From Anthoceros angustus (Eukaryota; Plantae; Anthocerotophyta): 64,000 nucleotides of DNA. The notes beneath the pieces are model-generated. The model searched no databases and had not been told where the DNA came from. It worked only from the letters and a program-made list of their open reading frames with translations. Positions within the stretch are counted from its first letter, which is position 1; each line of letters begins with the position of its first letter. A program made the translations under genes and the position numbers. Below are positions 3,126-64,000 of this stretch, piece by piece. The DNA is taken from the NCBI GenBank assembly GCA_010909165.1, contig VJWM01000019.1, positions 1 through 64,000 on the forward strand, written 5' to 3'.

Positions 3126-3129
3126 CACG

Positions 3130-22921: not shown

Positions 22922-23328
22922 TGAAATTTCAAAAGTGTGACGAGCTTGAGGGGCGGCCCCAAATTTGTCACGAGAAGGGTCTTGGAAGTGTAGGACTCTG
23001 GTGGGAGGATTGCCTATGCGGTGACTTGGGGGTCCAGGTCGCTTGGCTGAGATTAAGCGGTGCCTCTCATGACGTGAGTCATGTGAGTCATCGCGTAGGG
23101 GTGTGACTTGGGATGGGTCACCGGGCGGCGGTAGGAGGGGCGGTTAGTCGGTCAGGCGCGCTGTCGGGAGGTCGATAGTCGGTCGAGGTCGGTCAGGAGG
23201 GCACCTCCATCCGTGCGGGAAGGGCTCCCCACTCCTTCGTGGAAGCGAAACCTCTGAGGCAAGCGGTGGGATAAGTGTGGCCTTCTGAGTGAGGAGGTTA
23301 GGGGTCAGGGAACCTCCCACCACAATGC

Positions 23329-23562
23329 GTGAAGATGTTGGTGAGAAAATCTTCAATCAATGACATAGATTATAATCCTGAGGTGGAAGTAGATGAGGAC
23401 GTAAATACTGAAGACATGGATGCTGATGTACATGAAGAACACGAACAATCGGATAAAAACTTTAGTAATGGAGAAAATGTAGGTATTAAGGCTGATGAGC
23501 AATTGGAGGAAGACTTAAATATCCAAGAGGGTTTTCAAATTCATGGAAGACTTAAATTATAG
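23329..23562 (+). pseudogene. 3' fragment (acidic tail only) of the array gene at the island/array junction
   Basis: ORF KMLVRKSSINDIDYNPEVEVDED...HGRLKL. The upstream U-box is missing. Confidence 0.8.
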
Positions 23563-24579
23563 TACACGGACCAAGACTTAAGTAATGAAGAAGATATTGA
23601 TGAAGAATTAAATTATGGAGAAGATTGTGACAAAGACTTTAAGTAATGAAGAAGATTTTGAGGAAGACTTTAGTGATTGAAAGAGATTCGGATGAAGACT
23701 CAAGTAATTAAGGAGACACTCAGAATTCATGATGAAGTCAAGGTCGAGTATGAAGCATTGTACAATGAATGATAAAATACACGTACTAGTCGTGTATGAA
23801 AATATTAGGATTATTGCATATACTTAAAGAGAGAGCTTAATATAAGCGTAATTGAGCCTACTTGGAGATCATAGCTCTTTAATTGAGCTTGGATCGGATA
23901 TGGTAGCTACTCGGAGATAGATTAGGAAGGATGTCATTCCAAGTGAGGGTCATTATGTTGTAAGATTAAGAAAAATTGGACCCAAGTGAAGATTATTGCA
24001 TTAGAAAGTTAAATTGTTGTGGTAGCTACTATTCTAAATTTGGAGCATAGTGTAATAGTAGTATTCTAAGCATAATAATAACATAAAATGAACAATACTA
24101 TAGTTAGCTCATGGCCCTTTATAAAGGTTTAGCGGCCTAGAATTCATAAGAAACACTACTATAGTTAGCTCATGGCCCTTTATAAAGGTTTGGCGGCCTA
24201 GTATTCAAAAGTTCTATCACGTTAGCTCATGTGTTTCGTTCTTCACTTGTGGTGTAAAGTATATCTCAACATCAAGATATTATATGTTTTGTGTCCTATA
24301 TATTTTGCTACGTCGACTTTATGTGTTTGTTCCACACTTGTCGCATAAAGCATATCTCAACAACGTGTGAAAAGATTATAATTGCATCACCTATATTTGA
24401 AGATATACATGTATTAGCTCTTCAATTGAGCCTGCTTACGATTACTAGCTTTTTAATTGAGTTTACCCAGAGATAGTAGGTCCTCCATTAAAGATTCTTC
24501 TCTAGGTTATGAATAAGCTTTCAATACCAATATATTGGACTTGTTATATTGGTACTTGTGGAGTGAACAGTTCACAGTA

Positions 24580-25849
24580 ATGAAGATAATAAACTCATCA
24601 ACTTCTGAGAGTTCGGAAGAGGATACAATATCTGGTTCTCCACACTCAGATTCCAAAACCAATCACATACTCGAAGATGGCCAGAGTGGTCCTTTACGTG
24701 CACCTCAATGTCTTCCAGACGATTTCCCCCTTCCAACAGTTGAAGCAAAAGAGTCAGGATATGGGTGGCCGTATGCACCCATGCCTTGGCCGGGTCCAAA
24801 CGACATGTGGATGTGGAAAAGTTTAAGTAAGCCTCAAAACGTGATCCATATTAGGAGTAGATCTTTGCTCCACTAGCGTTTTGCAAGAATAGCGAAAAGA
24901 GCAAGACCTTTAAGAGCAAGGAAGCATTGCGAGATATGAAAGAAAATTATCCGTAATTAGATGTGGATGATTTTTCTTATCTTTTCAATGGAAAAGTGCC
25001 TATCAAAATTGAAGTTGACGACTCTATTGATAATGGAGAGAAGACAAAGATAAAGTCGACATCGAATACAAAGCATCATCAAGACTTACTTTGTGTGGAC
25101 TCACTTCTTAATGAATCGACATCCGACTTTGGAAAAGTCATATGTAAGAAGGAAGAGGAAGACTCGATGACGCAGATGATTTTGAAGCGTTGTGCAAAGT
25201 TCATGTCAACATCCTCATCTTTGAAGAGGTCCATGAGTCCAACCACGGTAATGATTTTGAGAGCAAGAAAACCGCGAAAAACCTAGACAATTTGCAAAGA
25301 AACCTCTTGTAGAGCCATCGCCTTCCCAAGAAGGTAGCTTGCCTCAAGCAAGTCTTGCGGGTGGATACGGTGGTGAAGCCGCCATCTTACCTTCTCGCCT
25401 ATTTCAAGGAGGCTCATGGCGAGCCTGTGACCGTGGTCTCTGGAGCCGATGAAAGAAATGTTTTGGGCTTGGTATGGTCAGGGAGAGAATATGTTTGAAG
25501 ATATGCATGGAAATAACAGAGGATGCCTACATCAAAAACATTTGGACTGCCAGAGAGACTATGAAGTGGTGTGCAAACAATGGATACGAGGAACCAAAGG
25601 CGCCTAGCTTGGAGGAAGCATCTAGATGCGTGAAGATGTTGGTGAGAAAATCTTCAATCAATGACATAGATTATAATAGGTGGAAGTAGATGAGGACGCA
25701 TCAAGACGTGGATGATGATGTACATGAAGAACACGAACAATCGGATAAAGACTTTAGTAATGGAGAAAATGTAGGTATTAAGTGATGAGCAATTGGAGGA
25801 AGACTTAAATATCAAGAGGGTTTTCATTCATGGAAGACTTAAATTATGA
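24580..25849 (+). CDS. Array gene copy 1: DUF7081-like/U-box/acidic-tail protein (frameshifts in assembly)
   Basis: ATG AAG ATA to ...AAATTATGA. Frames 24535..24876, 24963..25286 and 25474..25689 match the consensus. Confidence 0.7.
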
Positions 25850-26819
25850 AGTACACCGGACCAAGACTTAAGTAATGAAGAAGATATTGATGAAGAATTA
25901 AATGATGGAGAAGATTGTGACAAAGACTTTAAGTAATGAAGAAGATTTTGAGGAAGACTTTAGTGATTGAAAGAGATTCGGATGAAGACTCAAGTAATTA
26001 AGGAGACACTCACGAATTCATGATGAAGTCAAGGTCAGTATGAAGCATTGTACAATGAATGATAAAATATTGATCTAAGGAATATGTACGAGGTATGCAT
26101 AAGGACAAGAACAAAAGTTTGACCGTTTATAGCTTTTATGCGATGGAGTTGGCCACGCTACATGTATGGCTCTTTGTCCTTACTTACTTGGCCTGAGTTC
26201 GGTGAACCCTAAGCCCAAGGGGTAGGAGCTACAAACAAGAATTGCAAGGGCTCTCATGAGCGGATGGAAGAAATTATTCATGAGCATGGATGGCATGCTC
26301 AAGATGGAGGCTAGGGTGGCAAGCTTGTGAGTTCAACCTATCCCACTTGCGTTGTGTATGGACACCGCCTACTTACATTCCCTTCATCTGCCTTTTTTGC
26401 TTCCTCACAAGCAGTCACGATCTCCGGATAAATTGTCGCCACGCTTTAGAATTTGCAACCGAGCCCATGGGGTGTGTTCGACGATCCTCTTGTACCTCAC
26501 TTGCTTTCCCTCTTTCATTACGCGCTTCCAAAACCTAACACCTTGATTGTCCTTGGCAGTGCTCAAAGAAAGAAAAGGAGGAGGAATAGCCTAGCCGCTA
26601 GAAAGGTCTTCTCGATGACCCCATCTCACCTCCTCCATGCCTGTATGCTCAATCGATGTAGGAATTCAAAATATAGGAACCGGACGACGATCCGGGTGAT
26701 GTCACCGAGTTACTTTGTGATAGCTAGATTGATGATGGTAGACATAGTTACTATTTGGAACCTCACTTGGAGGCTACAATAGAGGGATGGTGGATTGCTC
26801 CATATGCGACAATCGAAAT

Positions 26820-27230
26820 GATGTGTTGAGACATGTGTAAGAGCATGGTTAATTAGTTTTAATTGTACGACAAATGACATGATAGGTTGAGACATGTACA
26901 AGAGCATGCACAATTTGGATAAATGACATGATATGTTGAGACATGTATAAGAGCATGCCTAATTTGTTTTAATTATACGATAAATGTATATTTTTCCCCA
27001 AGAGGGAATGGAAAACCTATAACAACGATACAATACAAAGAATCAAGAGTGTTCTACAAAGAATCAAGAGTGTTTTCCGCTGGTACGGTCTAGGTGTCAC
27101 TTTCTCCCCAAGAGGGAATGGAAAACCTATAACAACGATACAATACAAAGAATCAAGAGTGTTCTTGTTGGTACGGTCTAGGTGTCACGTTAAGATAAAG
27201 ATCACAAGATCGAGGCCACCGAGCTGAAAA
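26820..27230 (+). repeat. Spacer subrepeats in each unit: 3x TTGAGACATGT(G/A)(T/C)AAGAGCATG (~50-62 bp) and 2x ~111-bp CCCCAAGAGGGAATGGAAAACCTATAACAACG block
   Basis: Direct reading, conserved in all complete units. Coordinates are for the first full spacer. Confidence 0.9.
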
Positions 27231-27807
27231 TTGCATGCTACTTGGTTCTTGCGAGTTGCAGGCACCGACTTCAAGCAATACCATGCCATAGTGAGGAAGA
27301 TGATAAAAGACCACAAAGATCGATTTAAATGATGATGATGTCGTGTCCGCTGCGGCGATATGACCTCGAAAGACCACGCCTCTGAGGGTTAGAGCCTCAC
27401 CATGCTTGTAAGATGTCTTGGAGCAAAACGTGTTGAAGTAGGACACCGGAGAGAAGACGAAGATGAAGTCATTGTCGGATAATGAATGACAAAGAACATA
27501 CACGCATTAGTCGTATGAAAATATTAGGATTACATTGCATATACTTAAAGAGAGAGCTTAATATAAGCGTCTTAATTGAGCCTACTTGGAGATCATAGCT
27601 CTTTAATTGAGCTTGGTATGTAGCTTACTAGATAGATTAGGAAGGATGTCATTCCAAGTGAGGGTCATTATGTTGTAAGATTAAGAAAAATTGGACCCAA
27701 GTGAAGATTATTGCATTAGAAAGTTAAATTGTTGTAAGTAGCTACTATTCTAAATTTGGAGCATAGTGTAATAGTAGTATTCTAAGCATAATAATAACAT
27801 AAAATGA

Positions 27808-27945
27808 ACAATACTATAGTTAGCTCATGGCCCTTTATAAAGGTTTAGCGGCCTAGAATTCATAAGAAACACACTATAGTTAGCTCATGGCCCTTTATAA
27901 AGGTTTGGCCTAGTATTCAAAAGTTCTATGCGTTAGCTCATGTGT
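27808..27945 (+). promoter_or_regulatory. Duplicated TATA-like module (TATAGTTAGCTCATGGCCCTTTATAAAGGTTT) ~350-450 bp upstream of each gene ATG
   Basis: Two ~58-bp copies plus a third partial GTTAGCTCATG. Promoter function is inferred from position and the TTTATAAA motif only. Confidence 0.4.
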
Positions 27946-28279
27946 TTCGTTCTTCACTTGTGGTGTAAAGTATATCTCAACATCAAGATATTATATGTTT
28001 TGTGTCCTATATATTTTGCGTGTCGCCTTTTATGTGTTTGCTCCACACTTGTCGATAAAGCATATCTCAACAACGATGAAAAGATTATAATTGCATCACC
28101 TATATTTGAAGATATATGTATTAGCTCTTCAATTGAGCCTACGATTACTAGCTTTTAATTGAGTTTACCTGCAGATAGTAGGTCCTCCATTAAAGATTCT
28201 TCTCTAGCTTATTAATAAGCTTTCAATACCAATATATTGGACTTGTTATATTGGTACTTGTGGAGGAACAATTCCATGA

Positions 28280-29539
28280 ATGAAGATAACAAACTCATCA
28301 ACTTCGAGAGTAAGAGGATACAATATCCAGTTCTCCACACTGATTCCAAAACCAATCACATACTCAAGATGGCGAGTGGTCCTTTACGCACCTCAATGTC
28401 TTCAGATTTCCTTCCAACAGCTTGAAGCAAAAGAGTCGGGATATGGGTGGTCAGATGCACCCATGCCTTGGGTCCAAACGACATGTGGATGTGGAAAGTT
28501 TCGTAAGCCTCAAAACGTGATCCATATTGGGTAGTAGATCTTTGACCCGCCCACTTTAGCTTTGCAAGAATAGCGAAAGGAGCAAGACCTTTAAGAGCAA
28601 GGAAAGCATTCGCAGATATATGAAAAGAAAATTATCCGAATTAGATGTGGATGATTTTTCTTATCTTTTCAATGGAAAGTGCCTATCAAAATTGAAGTTG
28701 ACGACTCTATTGATAATCGAGAGAAGACAAAGATAAAGTCGACATCAATCATCATCAAGACTTACTTTGTGTGGACTCACTTCTTAATGAATCGACATCG
28801 CGACTTTGGAAAAGTCATATGTACAAAGAAGGAAGAGGAAGACTCGGCGACGCAGATGATTTTGAAGCGTTTTGTGTGCAAAGTTCATGTCAACATCCTC
28901 ATCTTTGAAGAGGTCGCCACAGAGTCCAACCACGTGAATGATTTTGAGAGCAAGAAAACCGCGAAAAACCTAGACAATTTGCAAAGAAACCTCTTGTAGA
29001 GCCATCGCCTTCCCAAGAAGGTAGCTTGCCTCAAGCAAGTCTTGTGCGGTGGATAGGTGGTGAAGCCATCTACCTTCTCTCGCCCTATTTCAAGGAGGCT
29101 CATGGCGAGCTGTGACCGTGGTCTCTGGAGCCGCCGCGAAAAGAAATGTTTTGGGCTTGGTATGGGGAGAGAATATGTTTGAAGACAGCATGGAAATAAC
29201 AGAGGATGCCTACATCAAAACATTTGGACTGCCAGAGACTATGAAGTGGTGTGCAAACAATGGATACGAGGAACCAAAGGCGCCTAGCTTGGAGGAAGCA
29301 TCTAGATGCGTGAAGATGTTGGTGAGAAAATCTTCAATCAATGACATAGATTATAATCCCGAGGTGGAAGTAGATGAGGACGCATCAAGACGTGGATGAT
29401 GATGTACATGAAGAACACGAACAATCGGATAAAAGACTTTAGTAATGGAGAAAATGTAGGTATTAAGACCGATGAGCAATTGGAGGAAGACTTAAATATC
29501 AAAGAGGGTTTTCACATTCATGGAAGACTTAAATTATGA
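28280..29539 (+). CDS. Array gene copy 2
   Basis: ORF pieces 28280..28534, 28679..28999 and 29112..29399. Confidence 0.7.
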
Positions 29540-32012
29540 AGTACACCGGACCAAGACTTAAGTAATGAAGAAGATATTGATGAAGAATTAAATGATGGAG
29601 AAGATTGTGACAAAGACTTAAGTAATGAAGAAGATTTTGAGGAAGACTTTAGTGATTGAAAGAGATTCGGATGAAGACTCAAGTAATTAAGGAGACACTC
29701 ACGAATTCATGATGAAGTCAAGGTCGAGTATGAAGCATTGTACAATGAATGATAAAATATTGATCTAAGGAATATGTACGAGGTATGCATAAGGACAAGA
29801 ACAAAAGTTTGACCGTTTATAGCTTTTAATTGTACGACAAATGACATGATAGGTTGAGACATGTATGGCTCTTTGTCCTTACTTACTTGGCCTGCGGAGT
29901 TCGGTGAACCCTAAGCCCACGAAGGGGTAGGAGCTACAAACAAGAATTGCAAGGGCTCCTCATGAGCGGATGGAAGAAAATTATTCATGAGCATGGATGG
30001 CATGCTCGATTATGGAGGCTAGGGTGGCAAGCTTGTGAGTTCAACCTATCCCACTTGCGTTGTGTATGGACACCGCCACGCCGACATTCTCTTCATCGTT
30101 TTTTCGCTTTCACGGTGAAAGCTTTGAAACAGTCACCGATCTCCGGATAAATTGTCGTCACGCTTTAGAATTGCAACCGAGCCCATGATGGGGTGTGTTC
30201 GACGATCCTCTTGTACCTCACTTGCTTTCCTCTTTCATTACCACGTTCCAAAACCTAACACCTTGATTGTCCTTGGCGGTGCTCCCCAAGAAAGAAAAGG
30301 AGGAGGGAATAGCGCTAGCTCGAGCTGCAAAGGTCTTCTCGACAGCCCATCTCACCTCCTCCATGCTGTCGATGCTCAATCGATGTAGGAATTCAAAATA
30401 TAGGAATCCGGACGACGATCCGGGTGATGTCACCGCAAGTTACTTTGTGATAGCTAGATTGATGATGGTAGACATAGTTACTATTTGGAACCTCACTTGG
30501 AGGCTACAATAGAGGGATGGTGGATTGCTCCATATGCGACAATCGAAATGATGTGTTGAGACATGTGTAAGAGCATGGTTAATTAGTTTTAATTGTACGA
30601 CAAATGACATGATAGGTTGAGACATGTACAAGAGCATGCACAATTTGGATAAATGACATGATATGTTGAGACATGTATAAGAGCATGCCTAATTTGTTTT
30701 AATTATATGATAAATGTATATTTTTCCCCAAGAGGGAATGGAAAACCTATAACAACGATACAATACAAAGAATCAAGAGTGTTCTACAAAGAATCAAGAG
30801 TGTTTTCCGTTGGTACGGTCTAGGTGTCACTTTCTCCCCAAGAGGGAATGGAAAACCTATAACAACGATACAATACAAAGAATCAAGAGTGTTCTTGTTG
30901 GTACGGTCTAGGTGTCACGTTAAGATAAAGATCACAAGACCGAGGCCACTGAGGAATTGCATGCTACTTGGTTCTTGCGAGTCACGGTGCGACCGACTTC
31001 AAGCAATACCATGCCATAGTGAGGAAGATGATAAAAGACCACAAAGATCGACGAAATGATGATGATGTCGTGTCACAAGGCGCATATGACCTCGATACGC
31101 CTCGGTGAGGGTTAGAGCCTCACCATGCTTGTAAGATGTCTTGGAGCAAAACGTGTTGAAGTAGGACACGGAGAGAAGACGAAGATGAAGTCATTGTCGG
31201 ATAATGAATGACAAAGAACATACACGCATTTAGTCGTATGAAAATATTAGGATTACATTGCATATACTTAAAGAGAGCTTAATATAAGCGTCTTAATTGA
31301 GCCTACTTGGAGATCATAGCTCTTTAATTGAGCTTGGTCGATACGGTAGCTTACTCGAGATAGATTAGGAAGGATGTCATTCCAAGTGAGGGTCATTATG
31401 TTGTAAGATTAAGAAAAATTGGACCCAAGTGAAGATTATTGCATTAGAAAGTTAAATTGTTGTAAGTAGCTACTATTCTAAATTTGGAGCATAGTGTAAT
31501 AGTAGTATTCTAAGCATAATAATAACATAAAATGAACAATACTATAGTTAGCTCATGCCCTTTATAAAGGTTTAGCGGCCTAGAATTCATAAGAAACACT
31601 GCATTATAGTTAGCTCATGGCCCTTTATAAAGGTTTGGCCTAGTATTCAAAAGTTCTATGCGTTAGCTCATGTGTTTCGTTCTTCACTTGTGGTGTAAAG
31701 TATATCTCAACATCAAGATATTATATGTTTTGTGTCCTATATATTTTGCTACGTGTCGACTTTATGTGTTTGCTCCACACTTGTCGACAAAGCATATCTC
31801 AACAACGTATGAAAAGATTATAATTGCATCACCTATATTTGAAGATATACATGTATTAGCTCTTCAATTGAGCCTACGATTACTAGCTTTTAATTGAGTT
31901 TACCCAGATAGTAGGTCCTCCATTAAAGATTCTTCTCTAGCTTATTAATAAGCTTTCAATACCAATATATTGGACTTGTTATATTGGTACTTGTGGAGTG
32001 AACAATTCACGA

Positions 32013-33311
32013 ATGAAGATAATAAACTCATCAACTTCTGAGAGTTCGGAAGAGGATACAATATCCGGTTCTCCACACTCGATTCCAAAACCAATCACAT
32101 ACTCAAGATGGCCGAGTGGTCCTTTACGTGCACCTCAATGTCTTCCAGACGATTTCCCTTCCAACAGCTTGAAGCAAAAGAGTCGGGATATGGGTGGTCA
32201 GATGCACCCATGCCTTGGCCGGGTCCAAACGACATGTGGATGTGGAAAAGTTTCGTAAGCCTCAAAACGTGATCCATATTGGGCGAGTAGATCTTTGACC
32301 GCTCCACTAGCGTTTTGCAAGAATAGCGAAAGGAGCAAGACCTTTAAGAGCAAGGAAAGCATTCGCAGATATATGAAAAGAAAATTATCCGAATTAGATG
32401 TGGATGATTTTTCTTATCTTTCAATGGAAAGTGCCTATCAAAATTGAAGTTGACGACTCTATTGATAATCGGAGAGAAGACAAAGATAAAGTCGACATCG
32501 AATACAAAGCATCATCAAGACTTACTTTGTGTGGACTCACTTCTTAATGAATCGACATCGGCGACTTTGGAAAAGTCATATGTACAAAGAAGGAAGAGGA
32601 AGACTCGATGACGCAGATGCGGATTTGAAGCGTTTTGCAAAGTTCATGTCAACATCCTCATCTTTGAAGAGGTCGCTCACAGAGTCCAACCACGGTAATG
32701 ATTTTGAGAGCAAGAAAACCGCGAAAAAACCTAGACAATTTGCAAAGAAACCTCTTGTAGAGCCATCACCTTCCCAAGAAGGTAGCTTGCCTCAAGCAAG
32801 TCTTGTGCGGGTGGATACGGTGGTGAAGCCGCCATCTTACCTTCTCTGCCCTATTTCAAGGAGGCTCATGGCAGAGCCTGTGACCGTGGTCTCTGGAGCC
32901 GTTTGCGAAAAGAAATGTTTTGGGCTTGGTATGGTCTTGGGAGAGAATATGTTTGAAGACATGGAAATAACAGAGGATGCCTACATCAAAAACATTTGAC
33001 TGCCAGAGACTATGAAGTGGTGTGCAAACAATGGATACGAGGAACCAAAGGCGCCTAGCTTGGAGGAAGCATCTAGATGCGTGAAGATGTTGGTGAGAAA
33101 ATCTTCAATCAATGACATAGATTATAATCCCGAGGTGGAAGTAGATGAGGACGCAATTCAAGACGTGGATGATGATGTACATGAAGAACACGAACAATCG
33201 GATAAAGACTTTAGTAATGGAGAAAATGTAGGTATTAAGACCGATGAGCAATTGGAGGAAGACTTAAATATCAAAGAGGGTTTTCACATTCATGGAAGAC
33301 TTAAATTATGA
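32013..33311 (+). CDS. Array gene copy 3 (best-preserved U-box start, ~32829-33036)
   Basis: KPPSYLLCPISRRLMAEPVTVVSGA (32529..32999) and MKWCANNGY (33012..33311). Confidence 0.75.
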
Positions 33312-36300: not shown

Positions 36301-37537
36301 GAAGGATGTCATTCCAAGTGAGGGTCATTATGTTGTAAGATTAAGAAAAATTGGACCCAAGTGAAGATTATTGCATTAGAAAGTTAAATTGTTGTAAGTA
36401 GCTACTATTCTAAATTTGGAGCATAGTGTAATAGTAGTATTCTAAGCATAATAATAACATAAAATGAACAATACTATAGTTAGCTCATGGCCCTTTATAA
36501 AGGTTTAGCGGCCTAGAATTCATAAGAAACACTGTACTATAGTTAGCTCATGGCCCTTTATAAAGGTTTGGCCTAGTATTCAAAAGTTCTATGCGTTAGC
36601 TCATGTGTTTCGTTCTTCACTTGTGGTGTAAAGTATATCTCAACATCAAGATATTATATGTTTTGTGTCCTATATATTTTGCTACGTGTCGACTTTATGT
36701 GTTTGCTCCACACTTGTCGCATAAAGCATATCTCAACAACGTATGAAAAGATTATAATTGCATCACCTATATTTGAAGATATACATGTATTAGCTCTTCA
36801 ATTGAGCCTACTTGGAGATCATAGCTCTTTAATTGAGCCTACTTGGAGATCATAGCTCTTTAATTGAGTTTACCCGGAGATAGATTAGGAAGGATGTCAT
36901 TCCAAGTGAGGGTCATTATGTTGTAAGATTAAGAAAAATTGGACCCAAGTGAAGATTATTGCATTAGAAAGTTAAATTGTTGTAAGTAGCTACTATTCTA
37001 AATTTGGAGCATAGTGTAATAGTAGTATTCTAAGCATAATAATAACATAAAATGAACAATACTATAGTTAGCTCATGGCCCTTTATAAAGGTTTAGCGGC
37101 CTAGAATTCATAAGAAACACATACTATAGTTAGCTCATGGCCCTTTATAAAGGTTTGGCCTAGTATTCAAAAGTTCTATCGTTAGCTCATGTGTTTCGTT
37201 CTTCACTTGTGGTGTAAAGTATATCTCAACATCAAGATATTATATGTTTTGTGTCCTATATATTTTGCTACGTGTCGACTTTATGTGTTTCGTTCCACAC
37301 TTGTCGCATAAAGCATATCTCAACAACGTATGAAAAGATTATAATTGCATCACCTATATTTGAAGATATACATGTATTAGCTCTTCAATTGAGCCGCCAC
37401 GATTACTAGCTTTTAATTGAGTTTACCCGGAGATAGTAGGTCCTCCATTAAAGATTCTTCTCTAGCTTATTAATAAGCTTTCAATACCAATATATTGGAC
37501 TTGTTATATTGGTACTTGTGGAGTGAACAATTCACGA

Positions 37538-52155: not shown

Positions 52156-55100
52156 AGTACACCGACCAAGACTTAAGTAATGAAGAAGATATTGATGAAG
52201 AATTAAATGATGGAGAAGATTGTGACAAAGACTTTAAGTAATGAAGAAGATTTTGAGGAAGACTTTAGTGATTGAAAGAGATTCGATGAAGACTCAAGTA
52301 ATTAAGGAGACACTCACGAATTCATGATGAAGTCAAGGTCGAGTATGAAGCATTGTACAATGAATGATAAAATATTGATCTAAGGAATATGTACGAGGTA
52401 TGCATAAGGACAAGAACAAAAGTTTGACCGTTTATAGCTTTTGCGATGGAGTTGGCCACGCGCACATGTATGGCTCTTTGTCCTTACTTACTTGGCCCTG
52501 TGGAGTTCCGGTGAACCCTAAGCCCACGAAGGGGGTAGGAGCTACAAACAAGAATTTCAAGGGCTCCTCATGAGCGGATGGAAGAAATTATTCATGAGCA
52601 TGGATGGCATGCTCAGTATGGAGGCTAGGGTGGCAAGCTTGTGAGTTCAACCTATCCCACTTGCGTTGTGTATGGACACCGCCTACTTCGTACATTCCCT
52701 TCACTGGCTGCCTTTTTTTGCTTCCTACAGGAAAGCCCTTTGAAACAGGTCACTGATCTCCAGATAAATTGTCGTCACGCTTTAGAATTTGCAACCGAGC
52801 CCATGATGGGGTGTGTTCTGACGATCCTCTTGTACCTCACTTGCTTTCCCTCTTTCAGTACAACGTTTCCAAAACCTAACACCTTGATTGTCCTTGGCAG
52901 TGTGCTCCCCCGAGCAAAGAAAAGGAGGAGGGGAATAGCGCTAGCTGCCTGAGCTGCAAAGGTCTTCTCGACAGCCCATCTCACCTCCTCCATGCTCGTA
53001 TGCGATGCTCAATCGGATGTAGGAATTCAAAATATAGGAATCCGGACGACGCATCCGGGTGATGTCACGCAAGTTACTTTGTGATAGCTAGATTGATGAT
53101 GGTAGACATAGTTACTATTTGGAACCTCACTTGGAGGCTACAATAGAGGGATGGTGGATTGCTCCATATGCGACAATCGAAATGATGTGTTGAGACATGT
53201 GTAAGAGCATGGTTAATTAGTTTTAATTGTACGACAAATGACATGATAGGTTGAGACATGTACAAGAGCATGCACAATTTGGATAAATGACATGATATGT
53301 TGAGACATGTATAAGAGCATGCCTAATTTGTTTTAATTATATGATAAATGTATATTTTTCCCCAAGAGGAATGGAAAACCTATAACAACGATACAATACA
53401 AAGAATCAAGAGTGTTCTACAAAGAATCAAGAGTGTTTTCCGTTGGTACGGTCTAGGTGTCACTTTCTCCCCAAGAGGAATGGAAAACCTATAACAACGA
53501 TACAATACAAAGAATCAAGAGTGTTCTTGTTGGTACGGTCTAGGTGTCACGTTAAGATAAAAGATCACAAGATCGAGGCCACTGAGCTCGAAATTGCATG
53601 CTACTTGGTTCTTGCGAGTCACGGTGTCGACTTCAAGCAATACCATGCCATAGTGAGGAAGATGATAAAAGACCACAAAGATCGACGAAATGATGATGAT
53701 GTCGTGTCACGCGTGCATATGACCTCGAAAGCAAGTACCACGCCTCGGTGAGGGTTAGAGCCTCACCATGCTTGTAAGATGTCTTGGAGCAAAACGTGTT
53801 GAAGTAGGACACGGAGAGAAGACGAAGATGAAGTCATTGTCGGATAATGAATGACAACATACACGTACTAGTCGTATGAAAATATTAGGATTACATTGCA
53901 TATACTTAAAGAGAGAGCTTAATATAAGCGCCTTAATTGAGCCTACTTGGAGATCATAGCTCTTTAATTGAGCCTACTTGGAGATCATAGCTCTTTAATT
54001 GAGTTTACCCGGAGATAGATTAGGAAGGATGTCATTCCAAGTGAGGGTCATTATGTTGTAAGATTAAGAAAAATTGGACCCAAGTGAAGATTATTGCATT
54101 AGAAAGTTAAATTGTTGTAAGTAGCTACTATTCTAAATTTGGAGCATAGTGTAATAGTAGTATTCTAAGCATAATAATAACATAAAATGAACAATACTAT
54201 AGTTAGCTCATGGCCCTTTATAAAGGTTTAGCGGCCTAGAATTCATAAGAAACACTGTACTATAGTTAGCTCATGGCCCTTTATAAAGGTTTGGCGGCCT
54301 AGTATTCAAAAGTTCTATGCGTTAGCTCATGTGTTTCGTTCTTCACTTGTGGTGTAAAGTATATCTCAACATCAAGATATTATATGTTTTGTGTCCTATA
54401 TATTTTTCCCAAGAGGGAATGGAAAACCTATAACAACGATACAATACAAAGAATCAAGAGTGTTCTACAAAGAATCAAGAGTGTTTTCCGTTGGTACGGT
54501 CTAGGTGTCACTTTCTCCCCAAGAGGGAATGGAAAACCTATAACAACGATACAATACAAAGAATCAAGAGTGTTCTTGTTGGTACGGTCTAGGTGTCACG
54601 TTAAGATAAAAGATCACAAGATCGAGGCCACTGAGCTCGAAATTGCATGCTACTTGGTTCTTGCGAGTCACGGTGTCGACTTCAAGCAATACCATGCCAT
54701 AGTGAGGAAGATGATAAAAGACCACAAAGATCGGCGAAATGATGATGTCGTGTCACCGCGCATATGACCTCGGCGGTACCACGCCTCGGTGAGGGTTAGA
54801 GCCTCACCATGCTTGTAAGATGTCTTGGAGCAAAACGTGTTGAAGTAGGACCGGAGAGAAGACGAAGATGAAGTCATTGTCGGATAATGAATGACAACAT
54901 ACACGCATTAGTCGTATGAAAATATTAGGATTACATTGCATATACTTAAAGAGAGAGCTTAATATAAGCGTCTTAATTGAGCCTACTTGGAGATCATAGC
55001 TCTTTAATTGAGCTTGGTCGGTAGCTTACTCGAGATAGATTAGGAAGGATGTCATTCCAAGTGAGGGTCATTATGTTGTAAGATTAAGAAAAATTGGACC

Positions 55101-55697
55101 CAAGTGAAGATTATTGCATTAGAAAGTTAAATTGTTGTAAGTAGCTACTATTCTAAATTTGGAGCATAGTGTAATAGTAGTATTCTAAGCATAATAATAA
55201 CATAAAATGAACAATACTATAGTTAGCTCATGGCCCTTTATAAAGGTTTAGCGGCCTAGAATTCATAAGAAACACTGTACTATAGTTAGCTCATGGCCCT
55301 TTATAAAGGTTTGGCGGCCTAGTATTCAAAAGTTCTATGCGTTAGCTCATGTGTTTCGTTCTTCACTTGTGGTGTAAAGTATATCTCAACATCAAGATAT
55401 TATATGTTTTGTGTCCTATATATTTTGCTACGTGTCGACTTTATGTGTTTCGTTCCACACTTGTCGCATAAAGCATATCTCAACAACGTATGAAAAGATT
55501 ATAATTGCATCACCTATATTTGAAGATATACATGTATTAGCTCTTCAATTGAGCCTACTTGGAGATCATAGCTCTTTAATTGAGTTTACCCAGATAGTAG
55601 GTCCTCCATTAAAGATTCTTCTCTAGCTTATTAATAAGCTTTCAATACCAATATATTGGACTTGTTATATTGGTACTTGTGGAGGAACAATTCACGA

Positions 55698-56996
55698 ATG
55701 AAGATAACAAACTCATCAACTCGAGAGTTCGGAAGAGGATACAATATCCGTTCTCCACACTCGATTCCAAAACCAATCACATACTCGAAGATGGCCAGAG
55801 TGGTCCTTTACGTGCACCTCAATGTCTTCCAGACGATTTCCCCCTTCCAACAGTTGAAGCAAAAGAGTCAGGATATGGGTGGCCATATGCACCCATGCCT
55901 TGGCCGGGTCCAAACGACATGTGGATGTGGAAAGTTTCTGGTAAGCCTCAAAAACGTGATCCATATTGGGCGAGTAGATCTTTGACTGCTCCACTAGCGT
56001 TTTGCAAGAATAGCGAAAAGAGCAAGACCTTTAAGAGCAAGGAAAGCATTCGCAGATATATGAAAGAAAATTATCCAGAATTAGATGTGGATGATTTTTT
56101 CTTATCTTTTCAATGGAAAGTGCCTATCAAAATTGAAGTTGACGACTCTATTGATCGGAGAGAAGACAAAGATAAAGTCGACATCGAATACAAAGCATCA
56201 TCAAGACTTACTTTGTGTGGACTCACTTAATGAATCGACATCGGCGACTTTGGAAAAGTCATATGTACAAAGAAGGAAGAGGAAGACTCGATGACGCAGA
56301 TGCGGATTTGAAGCGTTTTGTGCAAAGTTCATGTCAACATCCTCATCTTTGAAGAGGTCGCTCACAGAGTCCAACCACGGTAATGATTTTGAGAGCAAGA
56401 AAACCGAAAAACCTAGACAATTTGCAAAGAAACCTCTTGTAGAGCCATCGCCTTCCCAAGAAGGTAGCTTGCCTCAAGCAAGTCTTGTGCGGGTGGATAC
56501 GGTGGTGAAGCCGCCATCTTACCTTCTCCGCCTATTTCAAGGAGGCTCATGGCGAGCCTGTGACCGTGGTCTCTGGAGCCGCTTAAAAGAAATGTTTTGG
56601 GCTTGGTATGGTCGGGAGAGAATATGTTTGAAGACAGGCATGGAAACAACAGAGGATGCCTACATCAAAAACATTTGGACTGCCAGAGAGACTATGAAGT
56701 GGTGTGCAAACAATGGATACGAGGAACCAAAGGCGCCTAGCTTGGAGGAAGCATCTAGATGCGTGAAGATGTTGGTGAGAAAATCTTCAATCAATGACAT
56801 AGATTATAATCCTGAGGTGGAAGTAGATGAGGACGCAATTACTGAAGACGTGGATAATGATGTACATGAAGAACACGAACAATCGGATAATGGCTTTAGT
56901 AATGGAGAAAATGTAGGTATTAAGGCTGATGAGCAATTGGAGGAAGACTTAAATATCCAAGAGGGTTTTCAAATTCATGGAAGACTTAAATTATGA
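55698..56996 (+). CDS. Array gene copy 8 (complete N-terminal domain in one frame, ~55831-56125)
   Basis: ORF 55670..56230 gives the whole DUF7081-like domain. ORF 56331..56996 gives WYGRERICLKTGME...IKN...WCANNG plus the acidic tail. Confidence 0.8.
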
Positions 56997-57160
56997 AGTA
57001 CACCGGACCAAGACTTAAGTAATGAAGAAGATATTGATGAAGAATTAAATGATGGAGAAGATTGTGACAAAGACTTTAAGTAATGAAGAAGATTTTGAGG
57101 AAGACTTTAGTGATTGAAAGAGATTCGATGAAGACTCAAGTAATTAAGGAGACACTCACG
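56860..57160 (+). repeat. 30-bp coding minisatellite (acidic decapeptides, e.g. DQDLSNEEDI/DEELNDGEDC/DKDLSNEEDF), present in every unit
   Basis: GAAGAC(T)TTAAGTAATGAAGAAGAT-type motifs recur at ~30-bp spacing. Coordinates are given for copy 8. Confidence 0.85.
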
Positions 57161-59463
57161 AATTCATGATGAAGTCAAGGTCAGTATGAAGCATTGTACA
57201 ATGAATGATAAAATATTGATCTAAGGAATATGTACGAGGTATGCATAAGGACAAGAACAAAAGTTTGACCGTTTATAGCTTTTGCGATGGAGTTGGCCAC
57301 GCACATGTATGGCTCTTTGTCCTTACTTACTTGGCCTGCGGAGTTCGGTGAACCCTAAGCCCACGAAGGGGTAGGAGCTACAAACAAGAATTGCAAGGGC
57401 TCCTCATGAGCGGATGGAAGAAATTATTCATGAGCATGGATGGCATGCTCGATGGAGGCTAGGGTGGCAAGCTTGTGAGTTCAACCTATCCCACTTGCGT
57501 TGTGTATGGACACCGCCTACTGACATTCCCTTCATTGGCTGCCTTTTTGCTTCCTGAAAGCCCTTTGAAACAGTCACCGATCTCCGGATAAATTGTCGCC
57601 ACGCTTTAGAATTGCAACCGAGCCCATGATGGGGTGTGTTCGACGATCCTCTTGTACCTCACTTGCTTTCCCTCTTTCATTACCACGCTTCCAAAACCTA
57701 ACACCTTGATTGTCCTTGGCGGTGCTCCCCAAAGAAAGAAAAGGAGGAGGAATAGCGCTAGCTGCAAAGGTCTTCTCGACAGCCCATCTCACCTCCTCCA
57801 TGCTCGTATGCGATGCTCAATCGATGTAGGAATTCAAAATATAGGAATCCGGACGACGATCCGGGTGATGTCACCGCAAGTTACTTTGTGATAGCTAGAT
57901 TGATGATGGTAGACATAGTTACTATTTGGAACCTCACTTGGAGGCTACAATAGAGGGATGGTGGATTGCTCCATATGCAGACAATCGAAATGATGTGTTG
58001 AGACATGTGTAAGAGCATGGTTAATTAGTTTTAATTGTCGACAAATGACATGATAGGTTGAGACATGTACAAGAGCATGCACAATTTGGATAAATGACAT
58101 GATATGTTGAGACATGTATAAGAGCATGCCTAATTTGTTTTAATTATACGATAAATGTATATTTTTCCCCAAGAGGGAATGGAAAACCTATAACAACGAT
58201 ACAATACAAAGAATCAAGAGTGTTCTACAAAGAATCAAGAGTGTTTTCCGTTGGTACGGTCTAGGTGTCACTTTCTCCCCAAGAGGGAATGGAAAACCTA
58301 TAACAACGATACAATACAAAGAATCAAGAGTGTTCTTGTTGGTACGGTCTAGGTGTCACGTTAAGATAAAGATCACAAGATCGAGGCCACTGAGCTCGAA
58401 ATTGCATGCTACTTGGTTCTTGCGAGTCACGGTGCGACTTCAAGCAATACCATGCCATAGTGAGGAAGATGATAAAAGACCACAAAGATCGAAATGATGA
58501 TGATGTCGTGTCACCGCGCATATGACCTCGAGCGTACCACGCCTCGGTGAGGGTTAGAGCCTCACCATGCTTGTAAGATGTCTTGGAGCAAAACGTGTTG
58601 AAGTAGGACATCGGAGAGAAGACGAAGATGAAGTCATTGTCGGATAATGAATGATGACAACATACACGTACTAGTCGTATGAAAATATTAGGATTACATT
58701 GCATATACTTAAAGAGAGAGCTTAATATAAGCGTCTTAATTGAGCCTACTTGGAGATCATAGCTCTTTAATTGAGCTTGGTCGATACGGTAGCTTACTCG
58801 AGATAGATTAGGAAGGATGTCATTCCAAGTGAGGGTCATTATGTTGTAAGATTAAGAAAAATTGGACCCAAGTGAAGATTATTGCATTAGAAAGTTAAAT
58901 TGTTGTAAGTAGCTACTATTCTAAATTTGGAGCATAGTGTAATAGTAGTATTCTAAGCATAATAATAACATAAAATGAACAATACTATAGTTAGCTCATG
59001 GCCCTTTATAAAGGTTTAGCGGCCTAGAATTCATAAGAAACACTGTACTATAGTTAGCTCATGGCCCTTTATAAAGGTTTGGCGGCCTAGTATTCAAAAG
59101 TTCTATGCGTTAGCTCATGTGTTTCGTTCTTCACTTGTGGTGTAAAGTATATCTCAACATCAAGATATTATATGTTTTGTGTCCTATATATTTTGCTACG
59201 TGTCGACTTTATGTGTTTCGTTCCACACTTGTCGATAAAGCATATCTCAACAACGTATGAAAAGATTATAATTGCATCACCTATATTTGAAGATATACAT
59301 GTATTAGCTCTTCAATTGAGCCTACTTGGAGATCATAGCTCTTTAATTGAGTTTACCCAGATAGTAGGTCCTCCATTAAAGATTCTTCTAGCTTATTAAT
59401 AAGCTTTCAATACCAATATATTGGACTTGTTATATTGGTACTTGTGGAGTGAACAATTCACGA

Positions 59464-60758: not shown

Positions 60759-62548
60759 AGTACACCGGACCAAGACTTAAGTAATGAAGAAGATATTGAT
60801 GAAGAATTAAATGATGGAGAAGATTGTGACAAAGACTTTAAGTAATGAAGAAGATTTTGAGGAAGACTTTAGTGATTGAAAGAGATTCGGATGAAGACTC
60901 AAGTAATTAAGGAGACACTCACGAATTCATGATGAAGTCAAGGTCGAGTATGAAGCATTGTACAATGAATGATAAAATATTGATCTAAGGAATATGTACG
61001 AGGTATGCATAAGGACAAGAACAAAAGTTTGACCGTTTATAGCTTTTGCGATGGAGTTGGCCACGCGCACATGTATGGCTCTTTGTCCTTACTTACTTGG
61101 CCTGGAGTTCCGGTGAACCCTAAGCCCACGAAGGGGTAGGAGCTACAAACAAGAATTGCAAGGGCTCCTCATGAGCGGATGGAAGAAATTATTCATGAGC
61201 ATGGATGGCATGCTCGATGGAGGCTAGGGTGGCAAGCTTGTGAGTTCAACCTATCCCACTTGCGTTGTGTATGGACACCGCCTACTGTACATTCCCTTCA
61301 TCGGCTGCCTTTTTGCTTCCTACAGAAAGCCCTTTGAAACAGTCACCGATCTCCGGATAAATTGTCGTCACGCTTTAGAATTGCAACCGAGCCCATGATG
61401 GGGTGTGTTCGACGATCCTCTTGTACCTCACTTGCTTTCCCTCTTTCATTACCACGCTTCCAAAACCTAACACCTTGATTGTCCTTGGCGTGTGCTCCCC
61501 AAAGAAAGAAAAGGAGGAGGGAATAGCGCTAGCTGAGCTGCAAAGGTCTTCTCGACAGCCCATCTCACCTCCTCCATGCTCGTATGCGATGCTCAATCGA
61601 TGTAGGAATTCAAAATATAGGAATCGGACGACGATCCGGGTGATGTCACCGCAAGTTACTTTGTGATAGCTAGATTGATGATGGTAGACATAGTTACTAT
61701 TTGGAACCTCACTTGGAGGCTACAATAGAGGGATGGTGGATTGCTCCATATGCAGACAATCGAAATGATGTGTTGAGACATGTGTAAGAGCATGGTTAAT
61801 TAGTTTTAATTGTACGACAAATGACATGATATGTTGAGACATGTACAAGAGCATGCACAATTTGGATAAATGACATGATATGTTGAGACATGTATAAGAG
61901 CATGCCTAATTTGTTTTAATTATACGATAAATGTATATTTTTCCCCAAGAGGGAATGGAAAACCTATAACAACGATACAATACAAAGAATCAAGAGTGTT
62001 CTACAAAGAATCAAGAGTGTTTTCCGTTGGTACGGTCTAGGTGTCACTTTCTCCCCAAGAGGGAATGGAAAACCTATAACAACGATACAATACAAAGAAT
62101 CAAGAGTGTTCTTGTTGGTACGGTCTAGGTGTCACGTTAAGATAAAGATCACAAGATCGAGGCCACTGAGCTTGAAAATTGCATGCTACTTGGTTCTTGC
62201 GAGTCACGGTGTCGACTTCAAGCAATACCATGCCATAGTGAGGAAGATGATAAAAGACCACAAAGATCGACGAAATGATGATGATGTCGTGTCACCGCGC
62301 ATATGACCTCGGCAAGACCACGCCTCGGTGAGGGTTAGAGCCTCACCATGCTTGTAAGATGTCTTGGAGCAAAACGTGTTGAAGTAGGACACTGGAGAGA
62401 AGACGAAGATGAAGTCATTGTCGGATAATGAATGACAACATACACGTACTAGTCGTATGAAAATATTAGGATTACATTGCATATACTTAAAGAGAGAGCT
62501 TAATATAAGCGTCTTAATTGAGCCTACTTGGAGATCATAGCTCTTTAA

Positions 62549-62947
62549 TTGAGCTTGGTATGGTCTGGAGAGAATATGTTTGAAGACAGCATGGAAATAA
62601 CAGAGGATGCCTACATCAAAAACATTTGGACCGCCAGAGAGACTATGAAGTGGTGTGCAAACAATGGATACGAGGAACCAAAGGCGCCTAGCTTGGAGGA
62701 AGCATCTAGATGCGTGAAGATGTTGGTGAGAAAATCTTCAATCAATGACATAGATTATAATCCCGAGGTGGAAGTAGATGAGGACGCAATTATCAAGACG
62801 TGGATGATGATGTACATGAAGAACACGAACAATCGGATAAAAGACTTTAGTAATGGAGAAAATGTAGGTATTAAGACCGATGAGCAATTGGAGGAAGACT
62901 TAAATATCAAAGAGGGTTTTCACATTCATGGAAGACTTAAATTATGA
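62549..62947 (+). pseudogene. 3'-part copy of the array gene (5' part deleted at the GCTTGGT junction, ~62553)
   Basis: Spacer sequence TTAATTGAGCTTGGT joins directly to ATGGTC...GAGAATATGTTTG within the U-box region. Confidence 0.75.
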
Positions 62948-64000
62948 AGTACACCGACCAAGACTTAAGTAATGAAGAAGATATTGATGAAGAATTAAAT
63001 GATGGAGAAGATTGTGACAAAGACTTTAAGTAATGAAGAAGATTTTGAGGAAGACTTTAGTGATTGAAAGAGATTCGGATGAAGACTCAAGTAATTAAGG
63101 AGACACTCACGAATTCATGATGAAGTCAAGGTCGAGTATGAAGCATTGTACAATGAATGATAAAATATTGATCTAAGGAATATGTACGAGGTATGCATAA
63201 GGACAAGAACAAAAGTTTGACCGTTTATAGCTTTTGCGATGGAGTTGGCCACGCACATGTATGGCTCTTTGTCCTTACTTACTTGGCCTGGAGTTCCGGT
63301 GAACCCTAAGCCCACGAAGGGGTAGGAGCTACAAACAAGAATTGCAAGGGCTCCTCATGAGCGGATGGAAGAAATTATTCATGAGCATGGATGGCATGCT
63401 CGATGGAGGCTAGGGTGGCAAGCTTGTGAGTTCAACCTATCCCACTTGCGTTGTGTATGGACACCGCCTACTTCAGACATTCCCTTCATTGGCTGCCTTT
63501 TTGCTTCCTACAGAAAGCCCTTTGAAACAGTCACCGATCTCCGGATAAATTGTCGCCACGCTTTAGAATTGCAACCGAGCCCATGATGGGGTGTGTTCGA
63601 CGATCCTCTTGTACCTCACTTGCTTTCCCTCTTTCATTACCACGTTTCCAAAACCTAACACCTTGATTGTCCTTGGCGTGTGCTCCCCAAAGAAAGAAAA
63701 GGAGGAGGGAATAGCGCTGAGCTGCAAAGGTCTTCTCGACAGCCCATCTCACCTCCTCCATGCTCGTATGCGATGCTCAATCGATGTAGGAATTCAAAAT
63801 ATAGGAATCCGGACGACGATCCGGGTGATGTCACCGCAAGTTACTTTGTGATAGCTAGATTGATGATGGTAGACATAGTTACTATTTGGAACCTCACTTG
63901 GAGGCTACAATAGAGGGATGGTGGATTGCTCCATATGCAGACAATCGAAATGATGTGTTGAGACATGTGTAAGAGCATGGTTAATTAGTTTTAATTGTAC

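What the first reader, a model, noticed from the sequence alone, without database searches (positions are those of the whole stretch)
23325..64000. Gene-carrying macrosatellite (D4Z4/DUX4-like organisation) amplifying a chromatin-type E3 ligase
Seen: at least 9 full and 4 partial gene copies in ~3.7 kb head-to-tail units that extend past both window edges. There are no recognisable introns, TE termini or RT/transposase in the unit, and CG-free stretches are near-identical between copies. Established: tandem gene macrosatellites such as D4Z4/DUX4 and rDNA are homogenised by unequal exchange and silenced in a copy-number-dependent way. Inference: a recent, homogenised amplification. It may be a dosage-selected or selfish locus, for example an anti-silencing factor analogous in logic to VANDAL VANC, or a stage-specific chromatin factor.
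Basis: partly seen in the sequence, partly recalled or inferred. Interest (0 to 1): 0.8.

Follow-up and report, generated by a model that had tools for sequence, protein, structure and literature searches.

The report
Tandem array of U-box ligase genes
A plant genome (probably a hornwort) carries a real head-to-tail repeat of 3.76-kb units, each holding an intron-free gene for an unusual ubiquitin-ligase-type protein. Every copy looks broken in the assembly, but mostly through sequencing noise at methylated DNA, so it is a further example of a gene-bearing repeat kind the scan has already met several times in this genome.

Summary
Positions 23325-64000, and also 1-3078, are a head-to-tail array of a 3.76-kb unit. 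It holds 8 full units, 1 near-full gene copy and 4-5 partial ones, and runs off both window edges. A 20-kb transposon island splits it.

Each unit carries one intron-free reading frame of about 433 codons: a DUF7081 domain (Pfam E=4e-25), a U-box (three weak but concordant lines of evidence) and an acidic tail. None of 124 DUF7081 cluster representatives showed a U-box.

No assembled copy is intact; each has 8-22 frameshifts. The breaks look technical:
- There are 130 frameshifts against 5 in-frame stops.
- Indel events are about as frequent as substitutions.
- Differences sit at CG/CHG sites, and only 4% of CG cells are TG/CA.
- Away from CG/CHG the units are 99.1-99.96% identical.

My reading is a young or homogenised array, probably densely methylated. 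Whether the genes are intact or expressed cannot be decided from this window.

The unit has no transposon termini, primer-binding site or transposon proteins. The "chromatin-type" label rests on a weak MBD-like fold match (Z 3-4) and on PHD_Oberon partners in relatives. Nothing supports a selfish or anti-silencing role.

Earlier scan notes describe at least nine similar gene-bearing arrays, with the same noise, on other DNA of this genome.

The parts
1..1501 (+). Left-hand array segment (reference unit positions about 2035-3632); it runs off the window start
   Evidence: BLAST of the reference unit: 1-1302 at 91%, 1375-1501 at 91%
1500..3078 (-). Inverted partial unit (reference positions 1-1613) holding the 5' part of the gene, including DUF7081
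   Evidence: 93.6% identity, minus strand
3131..23324 (.). Transposon island that splits the array. It holds a young Copia element at 14208-21215 with target-site duplication GAGAG and a tRNA-Met primer-binding site at 14313
23325..23779 (+). Partial unit at the array edge (reference positions 1892-2348: the gene's 3' end and acidic tail)
23750..34839 (+). Units U1-U3 (23750-27462, 27463-31184, 31185-34839). U1 and U2 differ from the other units slightly more (0.4-0.8%; 0.9% from each other)
34836..38488 (+). Irregular stretch with gene-less short units (reference 1-559 joined to 3291-3760, junction at about 35643-35650) and a 5' partial gene copy (36823-38488)
38481..41382 (+). Near-full gene copy (reference positions 866-3760), joined to the preceding partial copy
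41383..53827 (+). Units U5 (41383-44913), a partial spacer (44908-46249), U6 (46250-50023) and U7 (50024-53827)
53828..54867 (+). Second gene-less short unit with the same 559-to-3291 junction (at about 54399-54406)
54868..58627 (+). Reference unit U8, among the least broken copies (9 frameshifts; U7 has 8)
55698..56996 (+). Gene in U8: tentative ATG at 55698, stop TGA at 56994-56996, about 433 codons, 9 frame breaks as assembled
55853..56125 (+). DUF7081 domain (PF23299, E=3.8e-25; AF2 model pLDDT 88.7)
32832..32915 (+). First half of the U-box, in frame in unit U3 (profile positions 2-29 of 73). The matching U8 region is about 56580-56790
56790..57140 (+). Acidic tail built from ~60-nt repeats. 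It continues in decayed form past the stop codon
58628..62408 (+). Unit U9. It differs from U5, 17.2 kb away, at 1 of 2299 clean columns
62409..64000 (+). Reference positions 1-151 joined to 1730-3171 (a 3' partial gene copy); the array runs off the window end

Best explanation
This is a real, young or strongly homogenised gene-bearing macrosatellite. A 3.76-kb unit was amplified head to tail, most likely by unequal exchange. This left gene-less short units with a recurring junction, internal deletions and an inverted piece, and transposons later inserted into the array.

Each unit holds one intron-free gene of about 433 codons. Its protein has an N-terminal DUF7081 domain (possibly an MBD-like reader fold), a U-box E3-ligase domain and an acidic repeat tail.

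The many frame breaks in the assembled copies are mostly sequencing or assembly noise at modified cytosines that short-read polishing could not repair in a repeat. The true copies are 99% or more identical and could be intact.

The same noise implies dense CG/CHG methylation over the whole unit, including the region upstream of the gene. The array is therefore probably packaged like a transposon and silent in the sequenced tissue.

Shown here: the array, the domains, the noise pattern.
Inferred: the methylation, the silencing, the amplification mechanism, ligase activity.
For: Array structure.

Domains:
- DUF7081 at E=3.8e-25.
- U-box from three lines: Pfam E=3.3e-4, the six best PDB matches all U-box proteins, and Atlas feature hits all U-box at 0.92.

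Noise pattern:
- 334 indel events against 379 substitutions relative to the consensus.
- Near CG/CHG, substitutions run at 3.4-3.8% and gap columns at 95-111 per kb. Elsewhere the figures are 0.5-0.7% and 27-31 per kb.
- At consensus CG sites 26% of cells are altered, but only 4.3% are TG/CA. Indels make up 12.7% and other substitutions 9.4%.
- There are 130 frameshifts but 5 in-frame stops in 9 copies, with 89-96% residue identity.
- 78% of the 118 frameshift calls in the 8 aligned full units lie within 3 nt of CG/CHG, against a 45% background.
- Noise near CG/CHG is raised in nearly every 250-bp bin of the unit, including upstream of the gene.

True identity: pairs differ at 1-22 of about 2300-2440 clean columns, and 10 informative sites show several real haplotypes.

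Independent control: a Copia element with 100% identical shared LTR sequence, an intact target-site duplication and a primer-binding site still has its polyprotein in six or more frames.

Literature: nanopore base errors caused by DNA methylation, and small indels in unpolished long-read assemblies, are described in PMC7501810.
Against: - I do not know the sequencing platform and have no reads, so 'noise' is inferred from the pattern alone.
- The simple majority consensus of 8 units is also frame-broken. Some breaks are therefore shared by most copies. That fits systematic basecalling error, but it also fits real shared mutations.
- The coding region is not better conserved than the spacer (2.7% against 2.0-2.1% raw substitutions), so nothing shows purifying selection.
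- No close relative (50% identity or more) exists among 1.84 billion cluster representatives, and the two word searches gave nothing. There is no outside copy to show an intact frame or a transcript.
- The U-box never reaches Pfam's cutoff, and no copy holds it in one frame.
Confidence: 0.7

Rival explanations
1. The array is real, but its genes are truly dead. The frameshifts are genuine mutations in a decaying pseudogene satellite.
For: - No intact copy exists.
- The majority consensus is also broken.
- The coding region is no better conserved than the spacer.
- Decayed acidic repeats lie after the stop codon.
Against: - The mutation spectrum is unnatural: indel events are about as frequent as substitutions.
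- There are 130 frameshifts against 5 stops.
- Changes cluster at CG/CHG, but only 4.3% of CG cells are deamination-type TG/CA.
- Sequence away from CG/CHG is 99.1-99.96% identical. That is too young to have gathered 8-22 frameshifts per 1.3 kb.
- A young Copia element shows the same breakage.
Confidence: 0.15
2. Assembly artefact: only one or two real units exist, and the assembler expanded them from noisy long reads.
For: Copy number cannot be checked without reads. Much of the inter-unit difference is noise.
Against: - Units differ by structural variants: short units with a recurring junction, fused partial copies and an inverted piece.
- There are 10 parsimony-informative substitutions away from CG/CHG.
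- Differences between units are graded.
- A 20-kb transposon island sits inside the array.
Confidence: 0.05
3. The unit is part of a transposon that captured a host gene. Candidates are an LTR-internal-LTR tandem or a Helitron-type capture. The repeat would then be a mobile-element array rather than a host gene array.
For: - The gene is intron-free.
- A pair of ~100-bp direct repeats, 82-89% identical and 572-574 bp apart, lies upstream of the gene.
- Earlier scan notes report retrotransposon or CACTA ends in other arrays of this genome (unchecked).
Against: - No inverted repeats.
- No tRNA-Met-type primer-binding site in the unit.
- No transposon protein domain on either strand.
- Within this window, copies of the unit lie only in the array and in its two flanking pieces at the left end.
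Confidence: 0.07

Closest known systems
D4Z4 macrosatellite with the DUX4 retrogene (human 4q35/10q26; from general knowledge)
   Same: Both have kilobase units (3.3 kb against 3.76 kb) repeated head to tail. Each unit carries one intron-free ORF for a nuclear-type regulator. Units are nearly identical, and the array is heavily cytosine-methylated (here only inferred from the noise pattern).
   Different: The gene family is different: a homeobox there, DUF7081 plus U-box here. Copy-number-dependent silencing and polymorphism are untested here. This array is irregular, with short units, an inversion and transposon insertions, and its ORF status is unknown.
V(Y)-chromosome repeat family of Marchantia polymorpha carrying the ORF162 gene (Okada et al. 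2001, cited in PMC5629387 and PMC9261002)
   Same: Both are in bryophytes, with a gene embedded in and amplified with a repeat unit. From my own memory, ORF162 encodes a RING-finger-type protein, that is, the same broad E3-ligase superfamily as a U-box.
   Different: The Marchantia repeat is sex-chromosome-specific and expressed in the male organ. For this array neither the chromosome type nor expression is known. Earlier scan notes place ordinary genes about 34-39 kb beyond the window end. I found no sequence relationship. The RING-finger detail could not be checked, because the paper is not held.
DUF7081 proteins of land plants (PF23299), commonly DUF7081 + PHD_Oberon + DUF7615
   Same: The N-terminal domain is a clear family member (E=3.8e-25). 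The invariant G-x-G-x-P-Y ... D-x-W-x-W motif is present.
   Different: Identity to any relative is only 33-48%. The partner domain here is a U-box rather than PHD_Oberon. No U-box appeared among the 124 representatives. Checks were a strict motif search and tblastn and Pfam scans listing the 25 most frequent families in each half; 12 rarer families in one half were not listed.
Plant U-box (PUB) E3 ligases
   Same: The first half reads P-x-x-L-L-C-P-I-S-x-x-L-M-x-E-P-V-x-V-x-S-G. It aligns with PUB12, PUB14 and LubX U-boxes.
   Different: There are no ARM repeats or kinase partner domain. The match is below Pfam's cutoff, and the second half can only be read by switching frames or copies.
Other gene-bearing tandem arrays noted by this scan in the same genome (ELF1, TFIIB, eIF5A-like, giant E2, OTU deubiquitinase, PLATZ, RING-H2, EG45-like)
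   Same: They share 2-4 kb units, intron-free divergent gene copies and frame breaks tied to methylation contexts (AI notes that I did not check).
   Different: The gene is different. I found no shared spacer sequence, but a blank in the sequence look-up means nothing.

Membership tests
Gene-bearing macrosatellite (D4Z4-like organisation) | Head-to-tail repeat of a kilobase-scale unit, many copies | tested here: met
   Period about 3.76 kb; 8 full units plus partial ones over more than 40 kb
Gene-bearing macrosatellite (D4Z4-like organisation) | Each unit carries a complete ORF | tested here: inconclusive
   Each unit has the full coding region, but with 8-22 frame breaks as assembled. The breaks look technical
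Gene-bearing macrosatellite (D4Z4-like organisation) | High identity between units (homogenisation) | tested here: met
   99.1-99.96% identity away from CG/CHG
Gene-bearing macrosatellite (D4Z4-like organisation) | Dense DNA methylation / heterochromatin and copy-number polymorphism | not testable with these tools
   Methylation is inferred only from context-specific noise. No reads, bisulfite data or second accession are available
U-box E3 ligases (PF04564) | A ~70-residue U-box scoring above the curated cutoff | tested here: inconclusive
   21.2 bits against a cutoff of 21.4, covering profile positions 2-29 of 73 in one copy. Other pieces gave no hit. The PDB and Atlas look-alikes are all U-box
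U-box E3 ligases (PF04564) | E2-dependent ubiquitin ligase activity | not testable with these tools
   Needs the true sequence and a biochemical assay
DUF7081 (PF23299) | Domain match above the gathering score | tested here: met
   88.7-90.5 bits against a cutoff of 27. 124 relatives found by phmmer
Methyl-CpG-binding domain (MBD/TAM) | Sequence-level match to MBD | tested here: not met
   No MBD Pfam hit in 125 family members. The profile against PDB sequences gave no MBD
Methyl-CpG-binding domain (MBD/TAM) | Shared fold | tested here: inconclusive
   In the wide VIA search, ranks 2-8 are all MBD domains, but Z is only 3.0-3.9. Foldseek gave nothing at E<=0.001
Transposable element (LTR, TIR, Helitron) | Termini, primer-binding site or transposon-encoded proteins in the unit | tested here: not met
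   No inverted repeats, no tRNA-Met-type primer-binding site, no transposon Pfam domain

The most novel reading that the evidence does not exclude
The array may be one of a genome-wide set of amplified, intron-free regulator genes. The scan notes list ubiquitin-system genes (E2, OTU deubiquitinase, RING-H2, this U-box) and transcription or translation factors (ELF1, TFIIB, PLATZ, eIF5A-like). In this reading the copies are intact and are released from methylation in one life stage, for example antheridia, spermatogenesis or the sporophyte. They would then act as ampliconic, dosage-driven or selfish genes, in the manner of Y-linked amplicons or Stellate/Su(Ste). The DUF7081-U-box protein would read modified chromatin through an MBD-like fold and ubiquitinate chromatin targets.
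Probability: 0.12. Interest if true: 0.8.

Novelty: new member of a known kind. Interest (0 to 1): 0.45.

Why it matters
If the copies prove intact and expressed, the plant would have amplified a new DUF7081 + U-box protein to ten or more identical copies. Together with the other arrays noted in this genome, that would point to a lineage-specific habit of amplifying regulator genes in methylated tandem repeats. That could be tested for stage-specific release or genetic conflict.

The practical lesson is more certain. In this assembly, frame breaks in methylated repeats cannot be read as pseudogenisation. Annotation will miss or mangle all such genes until the arrays are re-called from accurate reads.

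Tried and rejected
Searches and tests that gave nothing:
- Word-based protein searches with the 233-aa and 205-aa pieces gave nothing. The length filter excludes full-length proteins of about 433 aa, so this says little.
- The exhaustive phmmer search found only distant DUF7081 relatives at 33-48% identity. There is no orthologue, transcript-derived protein or clean copy.
- Pfam on further U-box pieces gave no hit.
- tblastn HSP chaining failed as a way to count frameshifts, because gapped HSPs ran through wrong frames. I replaced it with my own frameshift-aware alignment.
- The majority consensus did not give an open frame.
- Rfam and tRNA scans were empty.
- The bacterial-type promoter and terminator scan is uninformative for a plant.
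- The Atlas fold library was not available.
- A literature search for DUF7081 found no paper.
- Okada 2001 and Tanurdzic & Banks 2004 are not held. I found no paper on hornwort gene arrays.
- The sequence look-up in scan notes was blank, which means nothing.

Readings rejected:
- CpG decay as the cause of the CG-linked differences: only 4.3% of CG cells are TG/CA.
- A transposon unit: no termini, primer-binding site or transposon domain.
Full report

Self-comparison of the window and BLAST of a reference unit (54868-58627, 3760 bp) show a direct, head-to-tail repeat from 23325 to the window end. There are eight full units:
- 23750-27462
- 27463-31184
- 31185-34839
- 41383-44913
- 46250-50023
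- 50024-53827
- 54868-58627
- 58628-62408

Irregular pieces lie between them:
- Two gene-less 'short units' in which reference position 559 is joined to 3291. The junction lies at about 35643-35650 and again at about 54399-54406.
- A 5' partial gene copy (36823-38488) fused to a near-full one (38481-41382).
- A spacer fragment (44908-46249).
- A last unit in which reference position 151 is joined to 1730 (62409-64000).

On the left, 1-1501 is plus-strand array again and 1500-3078 is an inverted partial unit. Between the two array parts lies a 20-kb island with no copy of the unit.

TRF missed the array only because its longest period is 500.

**2. What does the unit carry?**

The coding region is at reference positions about 830-2130, which in unit U8 is 55698-56996.

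*DUF7081.* The 205-aa open frame 55613-56227 matches Pfam DUF7081 at E=3.8e-25.

*U-box.* Three independent but individually weak lines agree:
- Pfam U-box at E=3.3e-4 in the frame 32490-32996. The score is 21.2 bits against a cutoff of 21.4, and it covers profile positions 2-29 of 73.
- In phmmer against PDB sequences, the six best hits are all U-box proteins: LubX, a LubX-like ligase, PUB12 twice, a RING-type E3 transferase and the AtPUB14 U-box. E-values are 0.017-0.22.
- In language-model features, all listed look-alike clusters are U-box, with a top score of 0.92 and 177 shared features.

The second half of the U-box (…YERNVLGLVW… MEITEDAYIKNIWTARETMKWCANNG…) can be read only by changing frame or copy. 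Pfam does not detect those pieces.

*Tail.* An acidic tail of ~60-nt repeats follows. It continues in decayed form past the TGA at 56994-56996.

*Introns.* Overlapping open frames from different copies tile the whole coding region, so no intron is needed.

*Rest of the unit.* The remaining ~2.4 kb holds minisatellites of about 50-63 and 110 nt. It has no Pfam domain on either strand, no inverted repeats, no tRNA-Met-type primer-binding site, no Rfam family and no tRNA.

**3. Are the copies broken, and why?**

No copy is open. I built a 418-residue mosaic inside a script from referenced pieces of five copies. I used it only there and sent it to no database or fold tool. I aligned it to each of the nine near-complete copies with a frameshift-aware algorithm. 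The copies need 8-22 frameshifts each, 130 in all, but contain only 5 in-frame stops. Aligned codons are 89-96% identical to the mosaic.

The differences between units have an unnatural spectrum:
- Against the consensus there are 334 indel events and 379 substitutions.
- Among the six inner units, substitutions run at 3.4-3.8% within 2-3 nt of CG/CHG and 0.5-0.7% elsewhere. Gap columns run at 95-111 per kb against 27-31 per kb.
- At consensus CG dinucleotides 26% of unit-by-site cells are altered. Only 4.3% are the TG/CA expected from deamination; 12.7% are indels and 9.4% are other substitutions. Other dinucleotides are altered in 3-9% of cells.
- 78% of the 118 frameshift calls in the eight aligned full units lie within 3 nt of a CG/CHG, against 45% of coding columns.
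- The effect is seen in nearly every 250-bp bin of the unit, including upstream of the gene.

In 2121 clean columns away from CG/CHG only 32 vary, 22 as singletons and 10 as informative sites. Pairwise differences there are 1 to 22 per ~2300-2440 columns. U5 and U9, 17 kb apart, differ once. U1 and U2 differ from the other units at 10-19 sites (0.4-0.8%) and from each other at 22 (0.9%).

An internal control points the same way. The Copia element in the island has these marks of a recent insertion:
- 105 nt of shared LTR sequence that is 100% identical.
- An intact GAGAG target-site duplication.
- A perfect tRNA-Met primer-binding site.

Yet its gag, pre-integrase, SH3 and RVT_2 matches lie in six or more separate frames.

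Base errors caused by DNA methylation in nanopore data, and many small indels in unpolished long-read assemblies, are described in PMC7501810.

I therefore read most breaks as technical. I infer that the array is densely methylated at CG and CHG. The caveats are these:
- I do not know the platform.
- The plain majority consensus is also frame-broken, as systematic errors or real shared mutations would both predict.
- The coding region is not better conserved than the spacer.

**4. Relatives**

The two word searches found nothing; their length windows exclude the expected full-length protein.

The exhaustive search of 1.84 billion representatives with the DUF7081 frame found 124 proteins. The best had 33-48% identity and matched only over DUF7081. 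Named hits are uncharacterised flowering-plant proteins.

Their commonest partners are PHD_Oberon (30 of 124) and DUF7615 (23 of 124), or a second DUF7081. None showed a U-box, by a strict motif search, by tblastn, or among the 25 most frequent Pfam families listed for each half. Twelve rarer families in one half were not listed.

The fusion thus looks lineage-specific, and no clean outside copy or transcript-derived protein is available.

An AlphaFold model of the domain is confident (pLDDT 88.7). Foldseek finds nothing at E<=0.001. In the Foldseek-independent search, ranks 2-8 are all methyl-CpG-binding domains: MeCP2, MBD1, MBD2, MBD4, SETDB2 and one unnamed MBD. Z is only 3.0-3.9, and there is no sequence-level link. 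'Chromatin reader-like' is therefore a lead, not a result.

**5. How it most likely works**

Shown here:
- A tandem array of nearly identical units.
- One intron-free DUF7081 + U-box gene per unit.
- Noise tied to methylation contexts across the whole unit.

Inferred:
- Amplification and homogenisation by unequal exchange. Evidence is the recurring short-unit junction, the near-identity of distant units and the graded differences between units.
- Transposon-like methylation, and hence silence in the sequenced tissue.
- Ligase activity of the product.

Nothing here bears on dosage selection, drive or anti-silencing.

**6. Comparison with known systems and novelty**

The organisation matches D4Z4/DUX4 in unit size, in having one intron-free ORF per unit and in high identity.

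The closest bryophyte precedent is the repeat-embedded, male-organ-expressed gene on the Marchantia V chromosome (Okada 2001, as cited in PMC5629387, and PMC9261002). That it encodes a RING-finger protein is from my memory, because the paper is not held.

Earlier notes of this scan are unchecked AI notes, used only as leads. They describe at least nine other gene-bearing arrays in this same genome: ELF1 (two windows), TFIIB, eIF5A-like, a giant E2, an OTU deubiquitinase, PLATZ, RING-H2 and an EG45-like gene. Most of their follow-ups reach the same noise conclusion. I reached mine, before reading them.

Other notes call the genome a probable hornwort. Further notes place ordinary genes about 34-39 kb beyond the window end, which would cap the right-hand array at roughly 20 units.

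This array is therefore a new member of a known kind. It has an unreported domain combination whose integrity is undecided.

**7. Verdict**

Interest is moderate at 0.45. The array and the fusion are real and undescribed. But the scan has already met the phenomenon in this genome, the gene's state cannot be decided from the assembly, and no evidence supports the selfish or anti-silencing reading.

Noticed in passing
window 14208-21215: A young Copia retrotransposon. It has LTRs at 14208-14312 and 20969-21215, target-site duplication GAGAG, and primer-binding site TGGTATCAGAGC at 14313. The shared LTR sequence is 100% identical, but the right LTR carries an extra 142 nt (21026-21167). The polyprotein is split over six or more frames, probably by the same assembly noise as in the array.
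   Followed up: partly
tblastn with the array's domain gives only 26% identity over 80 residues (E=0.015), with a stop and a frame change. A short SFQWK(I/V)P motif lies in another frame. The support is weak.
   Followed up: partly
window 22744-23103, and 22001-24000 generally: A very charged low-complexity open frame (runs of E/K/R) and a strong GC skew (+0.32) lie just before the array edge. The origin is unknown.
   Followed up: no
window 10584-11149: Minisatellites of 94 and 174 nt (82-84% matches) lie in the transposon island.
   Followed up: no
window 55201-55326 (and the same place in every unit; also 2612-2732 on the inverted copy): A 63-nt tandem duplication about 400 nt upstream of the gene. 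Each copy holds the palindrome CCCTTTATAAAGG, which is TATA-box-like. It may be a promoter element of the unit or just a minisatellite.
   Followed up: no
window 41383-44913 versus 58628-62408: Units U5 and U9, 17.2 kb apart, differ at only 1 of 2299 clean columns, while neighbouring units differ at 6-22. This hints at a higher-order (multi-unit) duplication or at gene conversion within the array.
   Followed up: partly
locus L001 (Logan run SRR18067352), 334-912 and 1091-1777: In the closest short relative, the DUF7081 part and a PHD_Oberon part are called as two adjacent genes 180 nt apart. They are probably two exons of one DUF7081-PHD_Oberon gene.
   Followed up: no
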